DNA from: Prasinococcaceae sp. CCMP 1430
Taxonomy: Eukaryota > Plantae > Prasinodermophyta
Reading direction: 5' to 3'
NCBI GenBank assembly: GCA_013416795.1
Contig: RQSC01000854.1
Coordinates: forward strand, 27,597 to 91,294
Length of the DNA stretch: 63,698 bases
Part shown: piece by piece, positions 13,136-33,304 of the stretch
Layout: each line of letters starts with the position of its first letter
Numbering within the stretch: the first letter of the stretch is position 1
The notes under the pieces: generated by a model
The model's database searches: none
The model's input: only the letters and a program-made list of their open reading frames with translations
Told to the model about the DNA's origin: nothing
Translations under genes and position numbers: made by a program

Positions 13136-14422
13136 ATGGCGGCGTCCGCGCTGAATCTGCTGCCGGGCAAGTCGCTTGGGCCGTTCCGGCTGGGACAGCC
13201 CGTGGCAGACGCGCTCGCGGCCGTCGAGGACGCCGCGCACGGCAGCAGCGCAGGCGGCGAGGGGGGCGAGGGCGAGAGCGAGGACGCGGCGCTTGCCGCG
13301 CTGGCGTCTAGCCTACAGGTGCGCTACGACGCCGAGGCGCCGCTCGCGGCGGACCTCGTGCTGAGTTTTCCGGCGGGTGGCTTCCACTTGCGCTTCGACC
13401 CGCGCTCGCAGCGGCTGAGGCTCATCGAGGTCTACGACGTCGCGCGCTGCAAGCTCAGGTACTCGCGCCGGCCAGTCGGCGGGGCGCCCGCGCACGCGAC
13501 GTTCCAGCACTTGGCGGCGACGCTCGGGCCGACGTTCCCGGGCGCATTCGACGCGCGCCGGTGCGCGTACGTGCTGCGCTACCCGGGCCTGGCACTGCAC
13601 TTCCCCATACCGAAGCAGCACGCCGCGGCGGTTGCGGCCGAGGCCGCGAGGCCCGGCGCGGCACACCCGCTGGAGCTGCCCGACGGCACGACGCCGGTGT
13701 GTGCGCGGATGCTGCTGCACGCGGGCGGGGCGGAGGACGACCCGGCAGAGGCTGCGCCGCCCGCGCTGCCGCACGCCGTGCTGCCGCTGCACTACATGGA
13801 GACCGTGACGTGCGTGCTCGGAAAGGGGCTGCGCTTCGAGGCGAGCGGGCACGAGCTGGCGTTCGGCGCAGGCGCGCAGGACGTGTGGGCCGCGCTCGGC
13901 CCGCCTGATGCCGAGTGCAGCCGCGCGGACGATGCGATGGGCATCCACGCTGCGGCAGCAGGCCCCGAGGGGGACGCGGCGGGCTCCTCTGAGCAAGGCG
14001 GCGTGCGCGCTGAGGACCGCTTCTGGAACTACTTCTCGCGCGGCGTGGACCTCCTCCTAGACGGCGAGACGCACACCCTCAAGAAGGTCGTGGTGCACGC
14101 CAACTGGCCCGGCCACCCGGACTTCAACGCGTACGCCAAGTGCAACTTCGTGCTCGCCGAGGGGCCGTCAAGCGGCGCCAACGGCACGCAGTGCGGAGCC
14201 GATGGTGGCGATAAGGACCAGCAGCCGCGACGCGTGCTCGCCACCGTCGACAGCAACTGGCGCGAGGCAGCGGCGGCGTTGGGGCCCGCGGGGCCTCCGG
14301 CAGTCCACATGGGCGCGGATGGCAACCCCTTCGGACATACGTGGGTGTACGGGTGCAGGCACGCGGCTGTCGAGGTCATGAGCAACGGCGCCCTCGCGAG
14401 CGTGACGCTGTCCGCAGGGTAG
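13136..14422 (+). CDS. PHAF1/UPF0183 (C16orf70-like) family protein
   Basis: LLPGKSLGPFRLG, FHLRFDPRSQRLRLIEVYD, LGPTFPG, FWNYFSRGVDLLLDG, KKVVVHANWPGHPDFNAYAKCNF, NPFG..VYG, EVMSNGALASVTL match the family pattern. Confidence 0.9.
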   Translation: MAASALNLLPGKSLGPFRLGQPVADALAAVEDAAHGSSAGGEGGEGESEDAALAALASSLQVRYDAEAPLAADLVLSFPAGGFHLRFDPRSQRLRLIEVYDVARCKLRYSRRPVGGAPAHATFQHLAATLGPTFPGAFDARRCAYVLRYPGLALHFPIPKQHAAAVAAEAARPGAAHPLELPDGTTPVCARMLLHAGGAEDDPAEAAPPALPHAVLPLHYMETVTCVLGKGLRFEASGHELAFGAGAQDVWAALGPPDAECSRADDAMGIHAAAAGPEGDAAGSSEQGGVRAEDRFWNYFSRGVDLLLDGETHTLKKVVVHANWPGHPDFNAYAKCNFVLAEGPSSGANGTQCGADGGDKDQQPRRVLATVDSNWREAAAALGPAGPPAVHMGADGNPFGHTWVYGCRHAAVEVMSNGALASVTLSAG

Positions 14423-14945: not shown

Positions 14946-16534
14946 ATGGCGCAGGCGTCCGCGTGGCCGCTGTTGACCGTAGAGCAGGCGGTCGGGCTGG
15001 CCCTGCACGCGGCGTCGCCGCCGCTACCAATGGAGCGCCGCGCGCCCGCCGCCGCGGCGCGCGCACGCGCGGAGCGCCCGCGCACGCGCGGCGCTCGCCG
15101 CCCCCTTGCACGCGCCCCGCGCTGTGCCTCCGTTCGCGGCGTCGATTAAGGACGGCTACGCGGTGCGCGCTGCGGATTGCGCTGCCCCAGGCGCGGATGG
15201 CGCCGTGACGCTCGCCGTCGCCGGGGCGTCGCGCGCGGGCGACAGCGACAGCGAATCGATCGGCCGCCTCCCCGCCCTCGCGGCGTCGTACATCACGACG
15301 GGAGCGCCGCTGCCGGACGGAGCGGATGCCGTCGTGCAGGTCGAGAACGTGACACTCGCTGATGATGGCCAGAGCGTGCGCGTGCCCGCTGGCATCGCTG
15401 CCGGGCAAGACGTGCGGCAGGAGGGTTCGGACGTAGCAGTGGGCTCAGAGGTCATCGCATCGGGCACGGTGCTCACGCCAGCGGACGTAGGCCTGGCGGC
15501 GATGTGCGGCGCGGCCGAGGTCGAGGTGTACGGCACGCCGCTCGTTGGTGTCGCCTCCACCGGCAATGAGCTCTTCGACTCGGCGGCCGGTGCGAAAGGC
15601 GGTGCGGATGGCGCGGCCGCGCCCGGCGCGTCGCAGATATACGATGCCAACCGACCGATGCTGCTCGCCGCGGTTGAGGCGGCTGTCGGCGATGCGCGCG
15701 ACTACGGCATCATCTGCGACACGCGCGATGCCGTCGAGCGCGTCGTGGACGCGGCGGCGGCGGATGGCGCTGACATGCTCATCCTCAGCGGCGGCGTATC
15801 CATGGGCGACCGCGACTACGTCAAAGGCGTGCTATCCGCTCGCGGTCAGGTGCTATGTGGCCGTGTCCTGATGAAACCGGGCAAACCGCTGACCGTCGCG
15901 ACGGTGCCCTCGGAGGCCTCGAGGAATGGCTCCATGCTCGTGCTGGGACTGCCAGGCAATCCGGTACGTGCACCTGCGCGCCGCGTTGAGCTGCACCTTG
16001 CCTGGCGGGCGCGCCACGCGCGTGCGGTCTTGCCGCCCGCGCCTGCCTCGCGCCTGCAGCTAGCTGCTGACGCCGCCGCGGGCGTCGCCGCCGGCACGTC
16101 ACTCGGGGCGCCCGGGGATGCAGGTGAGCGCCCTCGCCACGTTTGCGCTCGTCGGCGCGCCTGCTCTGCGCGCGCTTGCGGGCCACCCGGTGGGCACCCA
16201 GCGCATGCCGCGCGTACGCTGCGTGCTCGAGACCGCAATCAAGCTGGACCGCGAGCGGCCCGAGTACCACCGCGCGGTTCTCACGTGGCGCGCTCGCGAG
16301 AATCGCTACTCAGCAGCGAGCACCGGGCGACAGATCTCCTCGCGGCTGGGCTCTTTCCGGGGCGCCAACGCGCTCCTCGAGCTGCCGCGCGGCGCCGGCG
16401 AGCTCGCCGCGGGCACCGAAGTGTCGGCGCTACTGCTCGGTGATCTCGGCGCCGCGCCTGCCTCCGACGCCGCGATGCCTACGCTGCCCGCCAGGGCCCC
16501 GCTCGTCCCGTCCGGCGGTGGGGGCGCCTCCTAA
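14946..16534 (+). CDS. CNX1E: Molybdopterin molybdenumtransferase, E-domain only (MoeA/CNX1E). Intron 15964-16123; apparent frameshift near 15060-15091
   Basis: PPFAASIKDGYAV, YITTGAPLPDGADAVVQVE, STGNEL, IYDANRPML, SGGVSMGDRDYVK, MKPGKP. The intron splits GLPGNP|VSAL exactly; then LDRERPEYHR and STGRQISSRL. Confidence 0.93.
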
Positions 16535-16833: not shown

Positions 16834-17802
16834 TCACAAAGACAGGAGCGTGAACGACACACGCCTGTTGGGCGCAAGGAGGTTGTAGTTCTCCTGCGCT
16901 TGCGCGCTCCAGTTTTCGTGGACGGGACACGTGTTTCCAGCCGCGTAAGCCTCGATGCGCGCAAGCGCCTCGTCGACGGCGTCGAGGTGCAGCTGATTGA
17001 ACTCCTCAACGACTTCCGCCTCGTCCTCCTCCATAGCCTGCGCGTCGAGCTGGTCGAACGCCATCGGCGCCCCGTCCGCGCCGTCCGCGCCCAAGTCCCC
17101 GCCGCCGTCGTTCCCCAGTAGCATGGCGTCCGCGAACGCGTTGGCAGCGCCCGTCCCGTGGCTGCTGCCGTTCTCACGCCCTGCACTGCCGCGCGCCACC
17201 TCTTCGGAGGCGTTGCCCCCGCTCGCCGCGCCGCTGCCCCCACTGCTCGTGCCCCTGAGCGCCTCCTGCTCCTGCGCGTCGTTGTCGAACCCACCCGCGG
17301 TGCGCGCAACCAGGTACAGCTGCACGTTCCGCGCGCGCTGCATGCTCAGCGCCCTCGCGATTTCTTCCGGGCAGTCCGGCTGCACGTGGCCGGTGACACG
17401 CAGCCGCAGCGTCGGGTGCCTGCGCAGCAGCGCGGCGGCCGAGTCGAGCGCCGGCTGCGCGCACAGCGCGAGGTCGCCGCTGCCGAACTGGAAGTGCACG
17501 TCCCCGAAGCGGGGCGGATTCTCCGCCAGGTGGAGCCTCTCCAGCGTCCACTCGGCGTCCGCCTCAACCTGCAGCGGCAGATCGCCCGCGCAGTGCGCCG
17601 CGTGGATGGCCGCCCAGTCCCGGCTGGCCGCCACGTGCCTGACGACCGCAGAGCCGCTCAGCGCTACGCGCGAGGCACGGCACACGCACGCGAGCCGCGC
17701 GAGGTCCGCCGCGCTGAGGTGCGAGAACAGCGCTACCAAGCACGCCCCGTCCAGCACGTCGAATGGATATGCGGTCGACGTGCTCGCCCCGCCGGCGGAC
17801 AT
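16834..17802 (-). CDS. F-box plus OmpA/MotB C-terminal-like domain protein
   Basis: N-terminal PFDVLDGACLVALFSHLSAADLARLACVCR (F-box). Then VHFQFGSGDL...LDSAAALLRRHPTLRLRVTGH...LSMQRARNVQLYL...NRRVSF (OmpA_C-like). Confidence 0.8.
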   Translation of the reverse strand: MSAGGASTSTAYPFDVLDGACLVALFSHLSAADLARLACVCRASRVALSGSAVVRHVAASRDWAAIHAAHCAGDLPLQVEADAEWTLERLHLAENPPRFGDVHFQFGSGDLALCAQPALDSAAALLRRHPTLRLRVTGHVQPDCPEEIARALSMQRARNVQLYLVARTAGGFDNDAQEQEALRGTSSGGSGAASGGNASEEVARGSAGRENGSSHGTGAANAFADAMLLGNDGGGDLGADGADGAPMAFDQLDAQAMEEDEAEVVEEFNQLHLDAVDEALARIEAYAAGNTCPVHENWSAQAQENYNLLAPNRRVSFTLLSL

Positions 17803-18725
17803 GGCGCCGCCGCCCCCCGCCCCACTCACCGACCCCGTGCCCGACCCAATCACGCCCGCTCACGACAACACCCACTCCGCCCGCCCGCGCCTCGCTCGCC
17901 GCCCTTGCTTCGCCCCCGACCGCGCGCCGGCGCCGCCGCCTCGCGTGCGCCGGCCGCCGCAACCTGAGGGTGCACCATGGATCCACCCGCCGCCAGCGAG
18001 TAGGCGGTCGACCCCGCCGCGCCCGCACCGCCGCGCGCGCGCGCGCTGTGGCAATCCGCAGCGCCCTCCGCGCGGAGCGCGCCGCAAAAACAAAAAAAAA
18101 GCATTTTCCCGCGGAATTCGATCGAAATCCCCTGCGGATGCCTCGGCAGACGATGCAATTTTCGTCGGGCGGGCTGCCTCGCTGGATCCATCGTCCGATC
18201 CGATACCACACACAGACGACGCTTCATCAATCAATCAACGACATGCACCGCGTCCTTTTGGTGGTGGAAAAAAAAAAAAACGGGGAAACATTCGGGGGAA
18301 ACGCGACGAGTGGGACGTAGATGGATGACGGTGATGATGTGATTGTTGAAGCTTTTTTTGCGCATGCTCAGCCAGACCGACGAAACCAACCAGCGACCGT
18401 CCATCCGTCCGTCCATGCAGTGTCGATCCGATCCAGGGCGTTTGACCGAGGGAAAGATGGGTATGCGAGCGGCGCGCCCCCACGTCGTGGGGTTGTTCGC
18501 ACCCTGCGCTCGGATCGTTTCCGTGGGGCCCCGCCGGTCGGATCTGGCCTGGCTGGTACCCTCGCGGGTGGTGCGCTCGCGCGCCGTGGCTGCCCCCGTG
18601 CTGGGTGTCGATCCGCGACCCGTCGGGCGCGCCGCGGCTGGCCCGCTCGCGCGCGCGGCGCGGCGGGATCGCAACGCGCTTTACAACTGGATGCTCAAGG
18701 CGCACGGCGTGAGTCACGNGCGGCG

Positions 18726-19756: not shown

Positions 19757-21073
19757 CTAGCTCGGCGCGTCAGCCGCGGGCCTCCGCAGCCTCTGTGCGA
19801 GCGTGTCATTGCCATCGACGGCGCCCGCGGTGCGCGGCCTCCGGGGGGGCGAGCGTGGGCGCAGCGTGCCGGCGGTGTCTGGCCTCGCCCCCCCAGCAGT
19901 GCTCGGCCTGGACTTCGCCGCGGTGCTCGGTCTCGAACCGGTTACGCTGCCTGGCTGGGCGGACAGAAGGACGTCTTCAGTCTTCTGTCTGAGCTCCTTC
20001 ACGGCAGCGTCCCCCACCGCTGCAAGCTCGCGCACCTCCTGACGGCGCGCAGTGCCCTCCCGCAGCACTTTATCGCGCTGTCTCCGAAGGTTGCTCGAGG
20101 CCTCGGCGACCACTGCATCGCCTGCCGTGCCCAGTTCGGCGAGCGGGTCCATGTGCAATTGCAGCGCTGCTCGAAGCTGCTCGGCGTCCCCCGCCCGTAT
20201 GACCGGGTCGACCTCATCGAAGTCGCCGTCCGTGCCGTCGCCATCGCTGTGACCCTGAACATGATCATGTCCCCCCCTTGCGTGCTGTTCGGCCTCGCCG
20301 GTGGCCGCCGGCTCCTCCTCCATTCCCGCCGTTGCACAGCTTGCTGGTGCGTGGAGAGTGGCCCCCCGCCCGTCGTCGTCGCCAACTTGCCCGGCGCTCT
20401 CGCGCTCTGCCTCATCCACGTCCCTCTTGTCCAGGACTTTCAATTTGGGCAACGCTGCGATGAGCTTTGCGCGGCTGTCAGGTGCTGCACCGAAGCCGTT
20501 GCCCGCACGAAGATCAGCGAAAGCCAGCGTGGGTGGCAACTCGGCGAGCGCGAGCGCGCGCATGGCGTTGTCCGTGACGTCGAGGAAGAGCAGATTCGGC
20601 AGGTCTGCAATTCCCTTGAGGTTCTCGAGGCGGTTGCCAGCCGCGCACACGAATCGTAGTGTCGGCAGGTCTGCCAGCGGGGCGAGAGTGGTGAGACGGT
20701 TGTGCTGCACGTACAGGTTGGTGAGCGCTTGCATTGGTCGCAGCAGCGTGCCGAGCGACGTGATGCGCTCGCGGTCGAGGTGTGCGTTGGTGACCCTTGC
20801 GAGTGCGTGTCGCATCGCATCGGCATCGGATGCCTCGTCATCGACGAAATCCTCGGGTAGGCACCGGTCGAGCAGCACCTCCTCGGAAAGCGGCCCACCC
20901 GGCAACGCGGCGGCCTCGGCCAGCACCAGCTCGAAGGCCTGCATCTCAGTGAGCGCCTCGTCCCCCCCCTCCTGCTCCTCCTCCACGCTGCTCGCGGCGA
21001 TTGGTGCGCGGCGGTCGCCTTCGATCGCGGTTCCCTCCCTTTGCGGGCTGACCGCCTCCGCGTTGGGCGCCAT
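19757..21073 (-). CDS. Leucine-rich repeat protein, LRRC46-like
   Basis: HLDRERITSL..LTNLYVQHNRL..LRFVCAAGNRL..LLFLDVTDN followed by LRRcap LPKLKVLD. Confidence 0.8.
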   Translation of the reverse strand: MAPNAEAVSPQREGTAIEGDRRAPIAASSVEEEQEGGDEALTEMQAFELVLAEAAALPGGPLSEEVLLDRCLPEDFVDDEASDADAMRHALARVTNAHLDRERITSLGTLLRPMQALTNLYVQHNRLTTLAPLADLPTLRFVCAAGNRLENLKGIADLPNLLFLDVTDNAMRALALAELPPTLAFADLRAGNGFGAAPDSRAKLIAALPKLKVLDKRDVDEAERESAGQVGDDDGRGATLHAPASCATAGMEEEPAATGEAEQHARGGHDHVQGHSDGDGTDGDFDEVDPVIRAGDAEQLRAALQLHMDPLAELGTAGDAVVAEASSNLRRQRDKVLREGTARRQEVRELAAVGDAAVKELRQKTEDVLLSAQPGSVTGSRPSTAAKSRPSTAGGARPDTAGTLRPRSPPRRPRTAGAVDGNDTLAQRLRRPAADAPS

Positions 21074-21740: not shown

Positions 21741-23350
21741 ATGGGGTTTGATGATGATGCGAGCGCGCACGCGTGGCGAAAGTGGCGGGCGGAAAGCGCG
21801 CGTCGCGCGGCGCTGGCGCTGGCGGCGCGGGCGCGCGCAACCGCGCGGAGGGCCGCCGCCGCGAGAGCGAGCTCCGCCGGCGCGAGCTCCCGCGCCGGCG
21901 CCGCGAGGAGCGCTACGAGGAGCGATACGACCCCTACGAGGAGCGCTACGACCCTTACGAGGAGCGATACGACTCCTACGAGCAGCGATACGAGCCCTAC
22001 GAGGAGCGCTACGAGGACCGGTACGAGCGGCGCCGCGAGGGGCGCGACGAGGCGCGGTACGTGCGCGCGGGCGTCGCGCGAAAGTGCCGCGCCATCACTC
22101 CGCATGCGTTTTTGAATAGTGACCGCCCGCGTGGCGGTCCCGCGCAAAAGCCGCGGGGCGGGGGTGGTGGGTTGGGGGGGAAGCTGCGGAGGGGAAGGGG
22201 GTGGGTGATGCGGGGTGGGCGGCGTGCGGGTGGGGTGCGGCGCGCCGCGGCGAGAGCTCGGGAAGGGGATTGGGAGGAAGATCGGGGTGGGTGCGTGGGG
22301 ACGCGCTTGCCGGGGCGGCGAAGCGCGCGGGCGCACGAGAGCGTGCCGCCAACAAATGCGCGCCCAAGAAGCGCGGGGGTTGTCGGGCGCGGCCCAAGCC
22401 TGGGGGCGGAGCTCAGGGCATGCATGCTGGTGCTCATGCACCCCGCCTTTCTTTTCGCCGCTGGCGGTGCCGCGCAGCGTTGCGCTGCGTTGCGCCGCAC
22501 AACTCATCCCACCCAGCCCTGCTCCTCACGGACCCTGCGCATGCACCGTTGTTGCGTTGCGCTTGGTGCTGACTGTCTCTGCATGCTGCCTCGACTGTTC
22601 CGTCGCGCTGGGTACCCCGCTCTACCTCCTCTGATCCTCAACTCAACCCACCCACCTACGCGCGTGTCCGAACAGCTGCCACGCGCGCCATGTGGGGCCG
22701 TGGCGAGCAAACGGAGGCTGAGCACAACTACGTTGTGCTGTGGCCGACGTCGTTCAGCGAGGTGCGCGGCGCCGCTTCGCCCTGCGCGTACTGCGCTCGA
22801 GCGAGCGCAGGCGCAAGTGAGCGAGAGGGCGCGCTGGCGCGCTCGCTTGATCGCTGTCATGCCCGCTCGTTGGCGCCTTCCTGACAACCGCTCGTCCCCT
22901 GGTCTGTCGCGCCTCGTTCGCCGCTTCGCGACCCCCGCAACCTGTGTTGTGCACGCTCGGCAGTGTGCGAGTGCCATCTCGCAGCTCAAGGAGGGCAGCA
23001 CGGTGGTGATCAACCTATCGGCTATCGGCAGCGTGGATGAGCAGCAGCGCTCCATCGACTTCGTGGCGGGGGGGTGCTACGCGATGGACGGCCACCAGGA
23101 GTGCCTCGCGGAGGGCGTCTTCCTCTTCGCGCCCAGCGACATGCCAGTCGCCACGGCCAGCTCGCGGCGAGATGCGCTCGTATCGCTTGCGAAGGTGGGT
23201 GGAGACGAACACGGGGAGATCGACCAGCAACACATGCAGCAGCACATGCAGCAGGAGCAGCAGCAGCAGGACTTCGGCGCGGAGCAACCGCCTCGGCAGC
23301 ACGGAGGGCACGACAGCGCGGGTAGCCACCCACCCGGCGCAACATACTGA
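21741..23350 (+). CDS. sepF: Nuclear-encoded cyanobacterial-type SepF (FtsZ membrane anchor). Exons ~21741-22056 (frame uncertain), 22676-22761, 22964-23350
   Basis: Spliced core YVVLWPTSFSE|CASAISQLKEGSTVVINL...QQRSIDFVAGGCYAMDGHQECLAEGVFLFAPS matches the cyanobacterial SepF consensus (EPRSFEE..ALRERKSVVLNL..AQRAVDFVAGG.YA.DGHQER.GE.IFLFTP). Canonical splice sites GAG|GTGCGC and GCAG|TGT. Confidence 0.88.
21905..22030 (+). repeat. Imperfect 21-nt tandem repeat (TACGAGGAGCGCTACGACCCC-like; YEERYDP in one frame)
   Basis: About 5 degenerate units visible. Confidence 0.85.
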
Positions 23351-24666: not shown

Positions 24667-27630
24667 ATGGGCTCGGCGGAGGCGACCGATCGCGTGCGCG
24701 TGTATGCGCGCGTGCGACCGGCCTCGCTCAGGGATGGCCCAGCGGTGGTGAGTGCGAGTGAGGACAGGCGCACGCTCATCTTCGGCAAGGGGTGCAACCC
24801 CGCGGGCGGAAACCTCGAGGCGGAAGGTCTGGAGGGCGCTGGCGCGCCCTCGCACGGGGCGACCGCCGGCGGCCGCGCCGCCGCCGGCCGCACGTTTGAA
24901 TACGACCGCGTGTTCGGCGGCGACACCACGCAGGCGGAAGTCTTCGACGAGCTCGGAGCACCGCTGCTGGCGGACGTGCTGGCAGGCTACGACGCGTGTG
25001 CGTTGGCGTACGGGCAGACCGGCGCTGGGAAGACGCACTCCCTGCTCGCGACAGGAGATAAGGACAAGGACGGCGCCGGAGCGGGCCTCCTGCCCCGGCT
25101 GGCTGCCGGCCTCTTCGTGGGCGTCGAGTGCGACCCGCGGCATGTGTACAGCGTGTCGGTGTCGATGTGCCAAATATACTGTGAGCAGATCGATGATCTG
25201 CTGAAGCCCAAGAACACGAACATGCGGCTCGTGCAGACGCACGACGCCGAGGGCGGGGGCGGCTGGGAGGTCAAGGGGCTGAGCTGGTACGAGTGCAAAA
25301 GCGCCGACTTCCTACTGAGCGTCATCCGCAACGGCCAGCGGCGGATCACCTACGCTGAAACAAGCCTCAACAAACACTCGTCTCGTGCGCACGCCGTCAT
25401 ACAGCTTCGAGTCATGCGGCGCAGGCGCATGGCCGCGAAGCAGGGCAAGAATCTGCAAGCCAGCTTGGAGAGGCAGGACAGCGCCAAGCGCGCGGTCCGC
25501 GCGACGCGCGGTCGGCTCACGGTGGTCGACCTGGCGGGCAGCGAGCGCGTCAAGCGCTCACTGGCGGAGGGAGCGCGCATGCGCGAGGCCCAGAACATCA
25601 ACACGTCGCTGTTTGCCTTCGGCAAGGTGGTGAATGCTTTGGCAACGCGCGCACCGCACGTGCCCTTCCGGGACTCGGTGCTCACGCGCCTGCTGGAGGA
25701 CCGAATGCGTGGCAACTGCAACACGCGGATGCTCGTGTGCGTGTCGCCCTCGGCCGCGTCGGCGGGCGAGAGCTTGGGCACTGCCGAGTTCGCCGCGCGC
25801 GCGATGCGCATCGCGGTGGATGCGAGCGTGAACGAGACAGAGATGCTGGTGGACGCCCGCGACCTCGTCGGCGACCTCGCTGTGGGCATGCTGCGAGACA
25901 GCATGGCCGCCGCCTCCGACGCAGAGATCTCGCAGCTGGAGGCCGCCCTCGCCGACGAGGAGGCCAAGCGCATGGGCGCCGAGGCGCGCCTGCAGATGGA
26001 GGCGCGAGCGCTTCGCGAGGCGTGCGAGGAGGTCATGGCGCACGAGCAGGAGGCTGCCATCGCCAGCGAGAGGGCGCACAAGGCAGAAGCTGCGGCCGCC
26101 GAGGCGCTGCGTCTCGCGCAAGATGCGGCGACCGACGCACAGGACGCCAAGAGGGATGCGGACGAGGCGACGCACGCGGCGGATGAGGCGCGCGCAGAGT
26201 GTGCGCAGTGGAAGCTGCGCGCGGAAGGGGCGGAACGAGAGCGCGGCGAAGCGCTGCGCTCGGCTGCATCTGCGGAGGTCGGCGCCGACACGCTGCGCGA
26301 AGAGTGCGCCGCATTGCGCGCGTCGGTATTGCGCGAGAAGGAGCGCTCGAGCGCGCTCGAGGCGGCGCTCGCACGCTCTGCGGAGACGACCTCGCGCGCG
26401 CATGAGCAGCTCGCGCGGGCGAGAGAGGTGTCTGCTGCTGGAGCGGAAGCTGCGCAGGAGGAGCTGAGCCTGGTGCACGCTGAGCTCGAGCACTCGCGCT
26501 CGGACGCAGCAGGCGCCCTCGAAAGCGCGCGTGCAGAGCGTCGCCGCGCAGACGTGGCCGAGGCCACCGCGGGCGAGCTCGCACGCGAGGCCAGGGCAGC
26601 GCATGTCGACCTCCGCCAGGCGGCCGCCGAATGTGCCGCGACCGCGAATGCGCTGCGTGCTGCGCGCCGCTCAGCGTCGGAGGCGGCCGACAAGGTTCGG
26701 CGCGCGGAAATCGCGCTCGAACAGGCATACGACGCCGCCGGCGAAGCCGAACAGGGGACCATCGACGCGCTCAAGGCAGAACTGGCAGGCACACAGCTTG
26801 AGGTGCGCCGCCTGGAACAGCGCGCCACGGAAGAAGAGGAGGCGTACGCCGTAGCGCGTGCGCGCATCACGAGCCTGGTTCATGACCTTAGCCGCGAAGG
26901 CTTCGAGTACCGCGCAAAGGTATCGGGGGATGCCGCCGCCGCCAAGCGCTCGCTGGACGCCACGCGAGGGCGCGTAGTGGACCTCGAGGAGACACTGGCG
27001 GGCGCCGAAGCAATCAGAAACGCGCTGCGCACCAGCGCGACTGGAGCAGAGGCGCAGGCGGCCATGTGGCGTTCGGCGGCGGTGGCAGCGGCGCACTCGG
27101 GCGTGCTGACCAGCAAACACTGCCGGGACGGCAAGCAGAGGCTCAGGGTGGTGCGCATCGTGCCGGGCGACGGAGCCGCAGACGGGTGTGACGGTGCGCG
27201 TGTCGAGTGGGCGTCGGTTGGGCCCTTCAAGCGCGGTGTGGGCCTTTCGGAGGCGGCAGTGTTGCCAGAGGCTGCGGAGGCGGCCGGCGCCGATCCTCAT
27301 TCGCCGCGCGCATCGAGCGCGCTCGTGCGCCTGAGCACGGCCTCCAGGCTTCTCGAGCTGGACTTTGGCGCGCCGGCGTGCGCGGCGGTGGCGCACGCGG
27401 CGCTCGAGGCGCTCGGGGTGGCGTCCCTGGTGGGCGAGCCGCAGCTCACGCCGGACTCAGCGGCGAGCGCGGGCCTCAGGAGCGCCCCGTGGGCCCCACC
27501 CGCCCACGAGCCCGGCTCTCCCGCCGGCGCTCCCCCCGCGGACGTCTCGGCGATCGGCGCCGAAGCCAAGGCAACGGCAGCAGCGATGCTCGCGCCACCT
27601 ATCCATGTGTCGCCCTGCAAGGCAGGCTAG
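24667..27630 (+). CDS. N-terminal motor kinesin with long coiled coil and C-terminal PH-like domain
   Basis: VRVYARVRP, AYGQTGAGKTH (P-loop), NKHSSRAH, VDLAGSER, HVPFRDSVLTRLL; Ala/Glu/Arg coiled coil. Confidence 0.95.
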   Translation: MGSAEATDRVRVYARVRPASLRDGPAVVSASEDRRTLIFGKGCNPAGGNLEAEGLEGAGAPSHGATAGGRAAAGRTFEYDRVFGGDTTQAEVFDELGAPLLADVLAGYDACALAYGQTGAGKTHSLLATGDKDKDGAGAGLLPRLAAGLFVGVECDPRHVYSVSVSMCQIYCEQIDDLLKPKNTNMRLVQTHDAEGGGGWEVKGLSWYECKSADFLLSVIRNGQRRITYAETSLNKHSSRAHAVIQLRVMRRRRMAAKQGKNLQASLERQDSAKRAVRATRGRLTVVDLAGSERVKRSLAEGARMREAQNINTSLFAFGKVVNALATRAPHVPFRDSVLTRLLEDRMRGNCNTRMLVCVSPSAASAGESLGTAEFAARAMRIAVDASVNETEMLVDARDLVGDLAVGMLRDSMAAASDAEISQLEAALADEEAKRMGAEARLQMEARALREACEEVMAHEQEAAIASERAHKAEAAAAEALRLAQDAATDAQDAKRDADEATHAADEARAECAQWKLRAEGAERERGEALRSAASAEVGADTLREECAALRASVLREKERSSALEAALARSAETTSRAHEQLARAREVSAAGAEAAQEELSLVHAELEHSRSDAAGALESARAERRRADVAEATAGELAREARAAHVDLRQAAAECAATANALRAARRSASEAADKVRRAEIALEQAYDAAGEAEQGTIDALKAELAGTQLEVRRLEQRATEEEEAYAVARARITSLVHDLSREGFEYRAKVSGDAAAAKRSLDATRGRVVDLEETLAGAEAIRNALRTSATGAEAQAAMWRSAAVAAAHSGVLTSKHCRDGKQRLRVVRIVPGDGAADGCDGARVEWASVGPFKRGVGLSEAAVLPEAAEAAGADPHSPRASSALVRLSTASRLLELDFGAPACAAVAHAALEALGVASLVGEPQLTPDSAASAGLRSAPWAPPAHEPGSPAGAPPADVSAIGAEAKATAAAMLAPPIHVSPCKAG

Positions 27631-28196: not shown

Positions 28197-31100
28197 ATGC
28201 GGCCGCCTGAGCACGAGGTCATCGTCATCGACTCGTCGTCGGACGATGACGAGCCCGCCCCGAAGCGTGCGCGCGCGGCCGCGGAAGACAGCGATAGCGA
28301 CGGAGACGTCGTTATTCTCGACGAGGTGTGTGCGCGGCGAGGGCGCCGGAGTGCGCTGCTGATGCGCAGCAATGAAGGGCGGAGCTGGGGGAGAGGGATG
28401 CGCGCAGTGGTGGCACGCTGCTCTGCGTTGCTGACGCGAGCGACGTCGCCGGCACGCGGACGCTGTGGCTGCCGCGATCGCCCCGCGCCGCACTACCTCG
28501 CCTGCGATGCGACTTCAGGCGCCGCACGCGCAGGACCCGGCGCCTGAGGCGAACGCGCTCGGTGGTGATGGAGACGATGATCTGATGATGACGGGAGCGA
28601 CAGGCGTGGTCGCGACGCGCGACCTACCGCACGCGAGGTGCCACTGCGGTGTGCACGTCTTCGACCCGTCGCCACGTGCGAAGTCGCACGCAGCCGCATG
28701 CGACAATTGGTGCGCAGCGCTGCTGCGGCGCGCCACACGGCGCCAAAACGGCCCTTGGCCCGAATCGCTGACGCGCGGTGCGGCGCTTGGCTCCACCTGA
28801 TGCAGCTTCTGCTACGTGTGTGACGTGCCAGCCAGCGAGTGCGACCAGTGGGGCCGCGGCAACAATGCACTCGACCATTGTCATGCCACCCCTTCCTCGT
28901 CAACGTGGCAGGGGCGCCGCCTGCTTGCGCGCCAGCGGACGGCAGCTGCCGCAGCAGCCGATGCGGGTGCATCCGGCGCTGGACCCATTGCCGCCTCGGC
29001 ACCGAGGCACGCGACCGGAGGCGGCGGCAGTGGCCAGCACCACTGGCCTTTATCTGCACCCCAGCCGTCGAGCCCAGTGTATTCCGCATATCACCAGTCC
29101 GACTACGAGAAGGAGCTCGCCAATCCAGCGACCGATGCGTCGCTAGTACATCTCGGCACGCTCGTATTCGACGTCGAACTGGACAAATCTTCGTACGCAC
29201 GTAGGCAGGGAGCACCAGCGAGCATCTCGTCGCTCGCGACCAAGCTGGCGCCGTACGGCTTTCGATACGGACTGGGAATTCCGCACCGCCTCCGTGGCCA
29301 GCGGCCCAGACGCAAGAACGGCAAGCTCGACCTCGACGCTTTGTGCCACAAACTGGAGATTAAGAGCATCCGTGGGCAGCCGGGCTGCGACGTGCCCACC
29401 CTGCCGGTGGCCTCTTCGAAGGAGATGATGGTTGTCCTTCTTGACGCCAAAGGCAGGAACCACGTGCTTCCCGTGAGCGTGGACGTCTCGTGGACTCACA
29501 GGCGCATGCTGGAGACATGCGCAGGCGCGTGCCGGGCGCACATGCCGCCCTCGATGAGCGTCGGCATGCTCTTTCCGAGCGCGACTCTGGACACAACCAC
29601 CCACACTTTTGGGCGCGAAGTCTGCTGCTCTTCATCTCAATGGACCTCCCGTCTCGACACCAAGGTTGAGAACGCAATCGATAACTACCTGTGGGTTCGC
29701 GCGTTCGTCCTGCCAGAGGCCAACGTCACGCCTAACCACACTATCATCGATGCAATCACGGTCAATGTCTTGCGACGCGATCGACATGCTGGCACGCGAA
29801 GTGATATCGGTCGCCTTCTGTGCAAGATGCCGGAAAAGGAGCGAGAGAAGATGTGCGAGGGCACCGGTGGCGGCGACACGAACGACTCCTGCTTGGGGTA
29901 CCTGTTTGAGGACCTTGCATCCGTCGTCGTGCCCAGGCCAAAGAAGGGTACTTCTGTGGAGGCAGCGGCGAAGCTGATCAAAGCGTCCGCCGTCGCATTG
30001 CTTGGGGGGGACTCAAGCGCTCCGCACTGCCGTCTGTACCAGAATTACACGAACTATAGCACGGAGCCCTCGAGGCTGTTCTCGAAGGAGACTGTACAGG
30101 GTGGATCTCACTACTACAATTATGGATGGCCCTACGTTGACGATTACCACGACGATTACCACGACGATCACCCGCGGCGCAAGACAGTGACCGACTGGCG
30201 CACGCGTAAGTTCGCGAATCTCGTCTTCGAGGTCTGGAGCACGGGCAAGACTGTGAAGCCCGCGCCTCTGCCACCTGCAAGCATGCCACGCAAAATGAAG
30301 AGCCTCAGCGTCAAGGAGGCCACGCGGAATGCTTCTTGCATTGATCGCATTGTGTCAGCGCACCGTGCTCGGCAGGCCGAGAAGCAACGTAGAATGCAAA
30401 CTGCGACGATGGCGAGGCACGTGTACTCCAACTTGGTGAAGGCGTCGAGCCTGTCATCCCGCATCGAGGAGGACTACCCCAGCCTCGTCAACAAGACTCC
30501 TGCGTTTCGTACCGCCTTTTCCCTTTCCGCTTTGGAAGCAGCATCGGGCATCGCAGAGAAGGAGCCAGGCGAGCTAACGATCAAGGTGTATGTGGCGGCT
30601 CCGGGCAAGGCAGACCAGGTCCGTCCCGCCATGTCGGAGGTCTTCGTCGTGCCGAATCAGTCTAACACATGGGCGAGAGCGCGCCTGCCCGGGCGGCGCG
30701 CGAGCGAGCCAGACATACACAGTGAGAGGATCGACCCGGTGGTCAGGGCGGTGATGTATGCCGGGCGCGATGGCGCTGAGCTTCGCAAGCAATGTCGGCT
30801 GATTGGGCGCATCAAGACACCAGAAGAGCTCGAGGCCGCAGAGAAGGAGACGAAGGGCCGCGCGAGCTCTCAAGCAGACGGTGCCAGCGGCAGCGGCGCC
30901 GGCGCCGGCGGCGGCCAGGACATTCCACGCGCAGGAGAGGACGACGGCGATGACACGCCGTGTGATGATGACTACAGCCACGTTCCGACGTACGACAACT
31001 ACGGCGTCTACTACGATCCTTACAGAAGCCGTGTGTCTTTGAAGGACTTCCTTGACATGTCGGTCGCGGAGGAGAGGCCTCAGACAACGCAGCCGGCTGG

Positions 31101-33304
31101 CCTGAATGTGACGATGCACAATTACCAGCTCCAGACGCTCAGGTGGATGCTCGACCAGGAGAAGGTGGTGGACGGTCTTCGTTCGATCCTCTGGACCAAG
31201 GTGCGCCTGGAGGGCGGTAGGACCGCCTTCTACTCCCACAGCCTAGGCGTGATCGCGGAGCGCGTGCCGTCGTGTCCTCGGGGTGGCTTCCTGGCAGAGG
31301 CGATGGGCATGGGGAAAACCATCATCTCGCTGGCGCTCATCCTGGCGCACCCCGCCCCTCCGCTTGCTGAGGCCCCCGTCACTGCGACGACCAAACCTAC
31401 CCCGGATGATCCCATCGGCTCGCGCGCCACGCTGGTGGTGTGCGCCGTGTCCCTGGTCGGGCAGTGGATTGATGAAGCCCGCTCGAAGTTGGCGGCAGAC
31501 AACCCATTGCGAGTGTACATGTACCACGGGCAGAATCGACTGCGTGACGTGAAGGTGCGGGAGAGACTGGCGCGCTGCTCCCTCGCTTGTGTGCGCGTGC
31601 CCGCGTCGGGCGGGTTCAGTCTGAGTGCTTGTGAGCTGTGTGCGCGCGCCTCGTTGCTTGGGCTGACGCAGGCATCCTGCGGCCCAATCCGCTGTATCCG
31701 CGCGTGAACGCCACGACTAGAGGGTCGCTGATGACTTCGACCTCGTCGTGACGACCTACGCAACTCTGGGGGCGGACTTTTCCAAGGCAAATCGGGAGGC
31801 CGTGAAGAGGCCTCCGTACGATGCCAAGCACCACCCGCTGGGCTCGATCAAGTGGCATCGCGTCATCCTCGACGAGTCCCACTCGATCAAACAGCCGAAT
31901 GTCAATCAGACAAAGGCATGCATAGCGCTGCGCGGGAATTTGCGCTGGTGCGCCAGCGGGACGCCGGTGAACAACGGCATCGAGGACCTGTTTGGTCAGA
32001 TGTGCTTCCTGAGGGCCGCGCCGTTGGACTCGAAGAATGGCTTCGACCTTGGCCTCAAGCACCATTTTTTCAATGGCTTCGTCAGCGCCAGCAAGGCACG
32101 CGAGCTTGCGGCCGTGCTGAAGCGCTGCATGGTGCGGCACACGCAGTCGCAGGTGATGCAGGGCAAGAAACTGCTGACGTTGCCCGAGAAGGACGACGTC
32201 GATGTTGCCGTGACCCTGAGTGCAGGCGAACGACAGAAGTACGACGAGTTACAAAAGGAGGCGCAGCGCGCGTATGGTGCCATCAAGCAGCAGGGACCGA
32301 GCGCGATCCAGCGGAACCGATTCACGGTTCTCTCGCTGCTGCAGCCCTTGCGGCGGTTCTGCAGCGGCGGGAGTCTGGCGCAGAAGGACCTGAAGGCGCC
32401 ACCGCAGCACACGGGCGGCCGCAGGCACACAAACCAGCAGCAGCAGCAATCGAAGGACAAAAAGCCAGTCATCGCGCCCGGCGCAGGCATGCGTTCTGGC
32501 GGCGCAAGTGGGTCCGGCGGCGGCGCGCACGCGAGGACGGGCGGAGCGGGCGGCTCGCGGGGGCCGAATGCCGACGTCAAACCTGTGCTCGCAGCGAACG
32601 AGTCACAGGTGTGCAGTGACCTGCTTGATCTCCCACCGGCGAGTGCGGATGCGACCGGCGCGGATGTCGCTGGTGCCGACGACGCGGAGCCGGACGTGCC
32701 CGCTTTCGTGTCGGAAGCCAAGCTGAGCGCACTTGTGAAGGAGCTCGAAAGAATGCGGGCGAGGGATGTGTCCTCCAAGGCCCTGGTCTTCACACAATTC
32801 CACGGCACGCTGCTTTTCTTGCAAAGGAAGCTGGTCGAAGCGGGGTTTGGATACAGATCCATTACTGGTTCCATGCCTCTCAAGCAGCGTGACCGCGCGA
32901 TACAGGCGTTCCAAAAGGACCCACCCACCACGATCTTTCTTCTGTCGATGCGCAGCGGGGCTGTCGGCATAAACCTGACGAGCGCGGACCACGTTTTCCT
33001 CGTGGAGCCGTGCATGAACCCGGCGCTAGAGGCGCAGGCTGTGGGCCGCGCGTGGCGCATGGGGCAGCAGCGCAAGGTGCACGTCAAGCGGCTCTACGTG
33101 AAGGACTCCATCGAGCAGCGCGTGCGCGAGCTGGCGAAGAAGCGCGAGAAGTCCGGGCCCCAGGAGCCCGACCCATCCGGCAGGGGCAAGGGCAAGGCGA
33201 AGAAGGCAGGCGCCGACTGTAGCGATCTCGCGGGGTCGCTCAAGGCTGACAAGGCGGCCCTCAAGGAGAGCGAGTTCGACGTCCTCTTTGGCATTGACGC
33301 ATAG
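28197..33304 (+). CDS. SNF2-family (RAD5/HLTF-like) helicase with N-terminal Cys/His-rich domain. Exons 28197-28325, 28519 (or 28534)-28709, 28806-31554, 31721-33304
   Basis: GGFLAEAMGMGKT, TLVVCAVSLVGQW, DLVVTTY, WHRVILDESH, RWCASGTP, KALVFTQF, AVGINLT, QAVGRAWRMGQ. Splicing restores CDNC|FCYVCD and RDVK|RVADDFD. Confidence 0.92.

What the first reader, a model, noticed from the sequence alone, without database searches (positions are those of the whole stretch)
16834..17802. F-box fused to an OmpA-like peptidoglycan-binding fold
Seen: an intronless gene with a eukaryotic F-box followed by an OmpA_C-like domain that has an ~110-aa low-complexity insert before the final NRRV strand. Known: OmpA/Pal/MotB domains bind the mDAP stem peptide through a GHTD Asp and the LSxxRA Arg; F-boxes are SCF ubiquitin-ligase adaptors. 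Here the Arg is kept (LSMQRA) but GHTD is GHVQ. Inference: a cytosolic SCF substrate receptor built from a bacterial cell-wall-binding fold. It could sense bacterial or plastid muropeptides, or be a repurposed peptide-binding pocket. I know of no characterised example.
Basis: partly seen in the sequence, partly recalled or inferred. Interest (0 to 1): 0.8.

Follow-up and report, generated by a model that had tools for sequence, protein, structure and literature searches.

The report
Algal F-box with repurposed OmpA fold
A marine green alga, and many other algae, carry a gene that joins a eukaryotic protein-degradation adaptor (an F-box) to a fold that bacteria use to grip their cell wall; the grip has been rebuilt across the whole family, so it probably recognises some other, still unknown, negatively charged target.

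Summary
Confirmed. The 322-aa ORF (16834-17802, minus strand) joins a divergent F-box to a complete OmpA_C/Pal fold. For the F-box, 16 of 17 PDB profile hits and 17 of the top 18 structural hits are F-box proteins. The OmpA fold scores Pfam 32.5 bits and VIA Z 13.6. One correction: the 113-aa insert lies before the last two strands, not the last one.

It is not a one-off: about 70 representatives at 50% identity share it, including Tetraselmis, Yihiella and Chromera, plus Prymnesium. None was found in 185,579 prokaryote genomes or IMG/VR.

The peptidoglycan site is altered family-wide. Asp271 is kept in 2/74 (bacterial 59/63), Gly274 in 1/74 and Asn279 in 0/73, while Arg286 is kept in 70/71 and a new Ala-Pro signature is fixed. 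Canonical mDAP or plastid-wall sensing is therefore unlikely.

Best reading: a SKP1-binding adaptor whose pocket now binds an anionic peptide or metabolite. The F-box lacks the CUL1-contacting proline, so SCF assembly is uncertain. No paper describing it was found. The scan noted a similar fusion on another piece of this genome (s1-377780). Nothing functional was tested.

The parts
16834..17802 (-). Whole ORF, 322 aa plus stop, single exon. The ATG at 17802 is preferred over the GTG at 17853.
   Evidence: contig L010 has a 1-nt deletion between the GTG and the ATG
17626..17766 (-). Divergent F-box, residues 13-59 (helices 19-26, 31-40, 42-49, 51-59); Asp18 in place of the canonical Pro
17506..17625 (-). 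Family-specific helical linker, residues 60-99, with the GDLPL and W-T-L-E-R-L-H-L-x-E-x-P-P-R-F motifs; the most conserved non-OmpA part (E88 96%)
17299..17505 (-). OmpA_C fold, first half (strand 1, helix 1, strand 2, helix 2), residues 100-168. Pocket: G138, Q141 (= Asp271), C144 (= Gly274), P145, A149 (= Asn279), R156 (= Arg286)
16960..17298 (-). 113-aa Gly/Ala/acid-rich insert, residues 169-281 (21% D+E); 177-250 disordered, 251-282 a predicted helix
16837..16959 (-). OmpA_C fold, second half (strand 3 at 283-289, strand 4 at 314-321 with NRRV), residues 282-322

Best explanation
The gene is the green-algal member of an old eukaryotic family of FBXO-type adaptors. SHOWN: residues 13-59 fold as an F-box; residues 100-322 fold as OmpA_C around a disordered insert; the two are joined by a conserved linker in dozens of algal and alveolate proteins. 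INFERRED: the F-box binds SKP1 (about 0.7), and the protein acts in the cytosol or nucleus, or in signal-anchored relatives on an organelle's outer face. INFERRED: the OmpA fold came once from a bacterium and its pocket was rebuilt. The Arg that holds the carboxylate of mDAP was kept. The Asp that holds its amine became Gln (54%) or Arg (22%), and the loop was fixed as P-x-A-P. The pocket therefore most likely binds an anionic group (a C-terminal carboxylate, acidic side chain or phosphate) on a eukaryotic peptide degron or a small metabolite, not mDAP. INFERRED, weakest step: the bound target is ubiquitinated by SCF.
For: Both folds are confirmed by profile and structure searches. The fusion is conserved over about 70 representatives at 50% identity, with named members in Tetraselmis, Yihiella, Chromera and Prymnesium, the last spliced and transcribed. 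Pocket counts, family vs bacterial-type hits: Asp 2/74 vs 59/63, Gly 1/74 vs 55/63, Asn 0/73 vs 53/63, Arg 70/71 vs 63/63, Pro145 72/74 vs 21/63. So the site is still constrained, but to a new pattern. 67 of 69 eukaryotic OmpA halves fall on one side of a branch against 40 bacterial ones. The C-terminal position after an F-box is the usual substrate-binding slot (established knowledge).
Against: No binding data of any kind. The F-box is under the Pfam cut-off in the window protein, and only 7 of 75 members hit Pfam F-box at E<0.05; structural Z values are only 4-6. The helix-1 Pro that contacts CUL1 is in about 4 of 48 members and not in this protein (PMC3237615). The kept Arg may be structural rather than ligand-binding, and the Asp position is variable (Q, R, G, A, N), which also fits simple relaxation.
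Confidence: 0.5

Rival explanations
1. The protein binds SKP1 but does not assemble an active SCF. It acts as a SKP1-F-box scaffold, as some non-canonical yeast F-box proteins do (Rcy1, Ctf13; own knowledge), with the OmpA fold as a protein-binding module.
For: The CUL1-contacting Pro is missing almost family-wide, and loss of this Pro markedly reduces Cul1 binding in Skp2 and Fbxo4 (PMC3237615). About a quarter of members carry an N-terminal membrane anchor.
Against: An acidic residue is kept at the start of helix 1 in most members (Asp in 28 of 48 at the column of residue 20). The same paper notes that beta-TrCP departs from the LPxE spacing. The hydrophobic F-box core is kept.
Confidence: 0.22
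2. It is a muropeptide sensor. The pocket still binds a peptidoglycan fragment from prey bacteria or the plastid wall, perhaps a variant stem peptide, and couples it to protein degradation like a hormone-sensing F-box.
For: Arg286, Gly268 and the whole fold are kept. P. coloniale has all ten core peptidoglycan enzymes (PMC7455551). Prymnesium and Yihiella are mixotrophs (own knowledge). Two members (P0016, P0050) have Asp at the key position.
Against: The Asp needed for DAP binding (PMC6572160) and the conserved Gly and Asn are gone in nearly all members, this one included. The family is present in lineages without plastid peptidoglycan. There is no transit peptide, and the plastid wall is shielded from the cytosol. 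The two Asp members nest inside the Gln/Arg clade.
Confidence: 0.13
3. The F-box is a relic or a look-alike helical bundle that only packs against the linker and OmpA domain; the protein has no SKP1 link.
For: Every single F-box match is weak (best PDB profile E 0.03; Foldseek E at least 2.5; Z 5.7 or less).
Against: Three searches of different kinds are each dominated by F-box proteins (16/17, 17/18, at least 17/19). One member passes the Pfam cut-off. The segment is conserved across the family: 42.3 bits against at most 7.5 for 500 shuffles, with a profile lacking this protein.
Confidence: 0.12
4. The fusion is an artefact: a mis-join, a bacterial contaminant or a chance ORF.
For: The window differs from environmental contigs beyond position 17960 and has an N at 18719.
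Against: That break is 160 bp upstream of the ATG. Ten independent contigs hold the intact gene beside the same MoeA and PHAF1 neighbours. Homologues occur as transcripts and spliced genes.
Confidence: 0.02

Closest known systems
OmpA_C-like peptidoglycan-binding domains (Pal, OmpA, OprF, YiaD, MotB; PF00691)
   Same: Same four-strand alpha/beta fold (Z 13.6 to Pal 5n2c), with Gly268, Leu/Ser282-283, Arg286 and the final RRV strand kept.
   Different: Eukaryotic, nuclear-encoded, no signal peptide, fused to an F-box. Asp271, Gly274 and Asn279 are replaced family-wide, a P-x-A-P loop is fixed, and long acidic inserts are present.
FBXO-class F-box proteins (FBXO31, Fbs2/FBXO2, FBXO3, FBXO22, GID2/SLY1)
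   Same: N-terminal F-box, a helical linker and a C-terminal binding domain. These are the top structural and profile matches to residues 8-99.
   Different: The C-terminal domain is an OmpA_C fold, for which no F-box protein was found described. The LP start of the F-box is missing.
Small-molecule-sensing F-box receptors (TIR1, COI1)
   Same: A ligand pocket coupled to an F-box is the model for the sensor reading (own knowledge; COI1 appears among the F-box matches).
   Different: Those use LRR domains and have demonstrated ligands; no ligand is known here.

Membership tests
OmpA_C-like fold (PF00691) | Profile match above the curated cut-off | tested here: met
   32.5 bits vs 27.2
OmpA_C-like fold (PF00691) | Complete four-strand alpha/beta fold | tested here: met
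   AF2 pLDDT above 90 in the core; Z 13.6, rmsd 2.2, 111 aligned
Canonical mDAP-binding OmpA_C | Arg286 equivalent | tested here: met
   R156; 70/71 in the family
Canonical mDAP-binding OmpA_C | Asp271 equivalent | tested here: not met
   Q141; Asp in 2/74 vs 59/63 bacterial; role from PMC6572160
Canonical mDAP-binding OmpA_C | TDxxG Gly and NxxLS Asn | tested here: not met
   C144 and A149; Gly 1/74, Asn 0/73
Canonical mDAP-binding OmpA_C | Export to the periplasm or plastid envelope | tested here: not met
   Only 12 residues precede the F-box; no hydrophobic segment
Canonical mDAP-binding OmpA_C | Measured peptidoglycan binding | not testable with these tools
   needs ITC or pull-down
F-box proteins | F-box profile above the curated cut-off | tested here: inconclusive
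   22 vs 24.3 and 17.4 vs 20.5 bits for this protein; Prymnesium member at the cut-off; family profile gives 16/17 F-box hits
F-box proteins | Three-helix F-box fold near the N-terminus | tested here: met
   pLDDT 90 model; 17 of the top 18 VIA matches are F-box proteins, Z 3.6-5.7
F-box proteins | Helix-1 proline that contacts CUL1 | tested here: not met
   Asp18 here; Pro in about 4/48 members; role from PMC3237615
F-box proteins | Binds SKP1 and assembles an SCF | not testable with these tools
   only single-chain prediction was available

The most novel reading that the evidence does not exclude
The family is a eukaryotic ligand-gated ubiquitin-ligase receptor built from a bacterial cell-wall-binding domain. 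It senses a bacterial wall fragment or another anionic small molecule and triggers protein degradation, which would be an intracellular microbe- or metabolite-sensing route shared by green algae, haptophytes, dinoflagellates and chromerids.
Probability: 0.15. Interest if true: 0.9.

Novelty: new variant of a known kind. Interest (0 to 1): 0.6.

Why it matters
It adds an undescribed substrate-binding domain to the F-box repertoire and shows a bacterial envelope fold redeployed in eukaryotic protein turnover. The pocket residues were swapped in a clean family-wide pattern that points to specific mutants (R156, Q141). The family spans major phytoplankton groups in which ubiquitin-ligase substrates and microbe sensing are little studied. 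Automated annotation sees only one domain at a time (UniRef calls the Prymnesium protein 'F-box domain-containing' and the Chromera protein 'OmpA-like domain-containing'), so the fusion is easily missed.

Tried and rejected
The word-index protein search with the window protein found only itself, and with the 75-row alignment only 3 hits. The full HMMER search and a region search from P0013 were needed. IMG/VR gave none. Both are exact-motif scans and can miss divergent copies. The synonymous-only differences in L001-L010 were rejected as evidence of selection, because those contigs were picked for an identical protein. An upstream exon with a membrane anchor was considered because of donor-like GTGAG sites 5' of the ATG; no hydrophobic frame was found in the window, but it is not excluded. 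Park et al. 2012 was not held and is cited through PMC6572160 and PMC12108004. An IQ-TREE run failed, so trees are FastTree only and no AU test was run. No SKP1 complex could be modelled.

Full report
Gene and organism. The finding is a single-exon ORF on the minus strand, 16834-17802, 322 aa, lying tail-to-tail with a MoeA/Cnx1 gene in a GC-rich eukaryotic window. Ten marine contigs, mostly Tara, hold the same gene at 98-99% DNA identity with the same MoeA and PHAF1 neighbours, so the fusion is not an assembly product. Codon-position GC is coding-like in all parts, the insert included. One contig has a one-base deletion between the upstream GTG and the ATG, which favours the ATG at 17802. Earlier scan notes call the genome Prasinoderma coloniale. 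I did not test this directly; it agrees with the published 69.8% GC (PMC7455551) and with the protein grouping beside Tetraselmis.

OmpA fold. Pfam OmpA matches residues 104-166 above the cut-off, and NCBIfam and PDB sequence searches return YiaD, Pal and OmpA. The AlphaFold2 model built on 75 family sequences has block pLDDT of 87-96 over residues 21-170 and 88-95 over 271-290 and 311-322. It matches Pal at Z 13.6, rmsd 2.2 over 111 residues from 90 to 321, and the top 33 matches are all OmpA_C-type domains (Foldseek agrees). The insert of residues 169-281 sits between helix 2 and strand 3, so strands 283-289 and 314-321 both follow it. Residues 177-250 are disordered.

F-box. On its own the protein scores just under the Pfam cut-offs. 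Three family-level tests agree that it is an F-box. A profile of 48 N-termini returns 17 PDB sequences, 16 of them F-box proteins (best E 0.028). A model of residues 8-99 (pLDDT 90) returns F-box proteins in 17 of the top 18 VIA rows (Z 3.6-5.7) and in at least 17 of 19 Foldseek rows. The Prymnesium member reaches the Pfam F-box cut-off. Each match is weak; the evidence is their consistency. The F-box is non-canonical in one important place. The proline at the start of helix 1, which contacts CUL1 and whose loss markedly reduces Cul1 binding in Skp2 and Fbxo4 (PMC3237615), is Asp18 here and is present in about 4 of 48 members.

A family. The word search saw nothing, but HMMER over 1.84 billion representatives gave about 70 eukaryote-type proteins with the same order of parts and a shared linker motif. 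Many are fragments or unspliced gene calls, and most have no taxonomic label. Named members are Tetraselmis striata, the dinoflagellate Yihiella yeosuensis, Chromera velia and the haptophyte Prymnesium parvum, AB1Y20_019082, whose gene has introns and a matching transcript-type contig. Sixteen more loci came from JGI metagenomes. The linker motif was not found in 185,579 prokaryotic genomes (one chance hit) or in IMG/VR. In a 70-column FastTree of the OmpA half, 67 of 69 eukaryotic rows lie on one side of a branch against 40 bacterial rows (support 91). This is compatible with one acquisition but is weak, query-biased and names no donor. On 166 columns the window protein groups with Tetraselmis, an MMETSP protein and two marine picoeukaryote proteins (support 88), as vertical descent in green algae would give. 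Nearly all full-length members have an acidic insert. In this green group it is long and lies between helix 2 and strand 3; in the group containing Prymnesium it mostly lies between strands 3 and 4. Fifteen of 55 rows have an N-terminal hydrophobic segment, mostly followed by basic residues, like an organelle signal anchor. The window protein has none.

The pocket. In A. baumannii OmpA, Asp271 and Arg286 bind diaminopimelate, and alanine mutants of either lose binding by ITC (PMC12108004; PMC6572160). By alignment to 3td3 these are Q141 and R156, with the same 15-residue spacing. Counting the 50%-identity representatives, the bacterial-type hits have Asp 59/63, Gly274 55/63, Asn279 53/63 and Arg 63/63. 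The eukaryotic family has Asp 2/74 (Gln 40, Arg 16), Gly 1/74 (Ala 65), Asn 0/73 (Gly 41, Ala 19), Arg 70/71, and Pro at the next position in 72/74 against 21/63. The site has therefore not simply decayed: three canonical residues were replaced while the Arg and a new P-x-A-P loop are nearly invariant. That the Arg holds the carboxylate and the Asp the amine of mDAP is my own knowledge of the structure. Keeping the first and turning the second into Gln or Arg fits an anionic ligand without a free amine. This is inference, and the Arg could be structural.

Mechanism and rivals. Best reading (0.5): a SKP1-binding adaptor that uses the rebuilt pocket to recognise an anionic eukaryotic degron or metabolite and probably delivers it to SCF. 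Rivals are a SKP1-only scaffold without CUL1 (0.22), a true muropeptide sensor (0.13), a relic F-box (0.12) and an artefact (0.02). The plastid-wall version of the sensor idea is attractive for Prasinoderma, which has the ten core peptidoglycan enzymes (PMC7455551). It cannot explain the family, which includes a core chlorophyte (a group that paper lists as having lost the pathway) and algae with secondary red plastids.

Novelty. Searches of PMC and bioRxiv found no paper describing an F-box-OmpA protein or OmpA-like domains in these algae; subscription journals are not covered. It works like an FBXO adaptor and folds like OmpA_C. It fails the residue test for a canonical mDAP binder and lacks one canonical SCF residue. 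I class it as a new variant of a known kind. The scan recorded a shorter F-box/OmpA gene on another piece of this genome with a similar conclusion (s1-377780). I could not check that locus and do not count it as support.

Noticed in passing
window 17961-18719: Five environmental contigs (L001, L002, L005, L006, L010) match the window only up to 17960 and share a different upstream sequence. The window's block beyond that point has A-tracts, lower GC and ends near an N at 18719. It may be a strain-specific insertion or a scaffold mis-join in the promoter region; no terminal repeats were found.
   Followed up: partly
window 15106-16534 (+): MoeA/Cnx1-like molybdenum-cofactor gene, tail-to-tail with the finding. 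A GT-AG intron at about 15964-16123 restores the GNPVSA motif.
   Followed up: partly
P0010, P0011, P0014, P0015, P0023, P0027, P0031, P0036, P0037, P0071, P0090: N-terminal hydrophobic helix followed by 3-5 basic residues, like an organelle outer-membrane signal anchor. Other members (P0013, P0018, P0046) have NLS-like basic clusters without it.
   Followed up: partly
P0016, P0050: The only two family members with Asp at the Asp271 position. They nest inside the Gln/Arg clade and still lack the Gly and Asn; natural comparators for a binding test.
   Followed up: no
P0076, P0094, P0095, P0100, P0106, P0122, P0131, P0133, P0138, P0149, P0153: More divergent subfamilies with a shorter linker and an uninterrupted OmpA fold, several still with an F-box-like N-terminus; the superfamily is broader than the core group.
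   Followed up: partly
P0042, P0067: Family members joined to a DEAD-box helicase-like and a methyltransferase-like segment (judged by eye), each seen once; probably chimeric gene calls.
   Followed up: no
window 13136-14422, 19757-21073, 21773-23350, 24667-27630, 28816-31707: Neighbours are PHAF1, an LRR protein, SepF, a kinesin and an SNF2-related gene; no functional link to the finding is apparent.
   Followed up: no
window 10801 onward: A run of at least 50 N (assembly gap).
   Followed up: no
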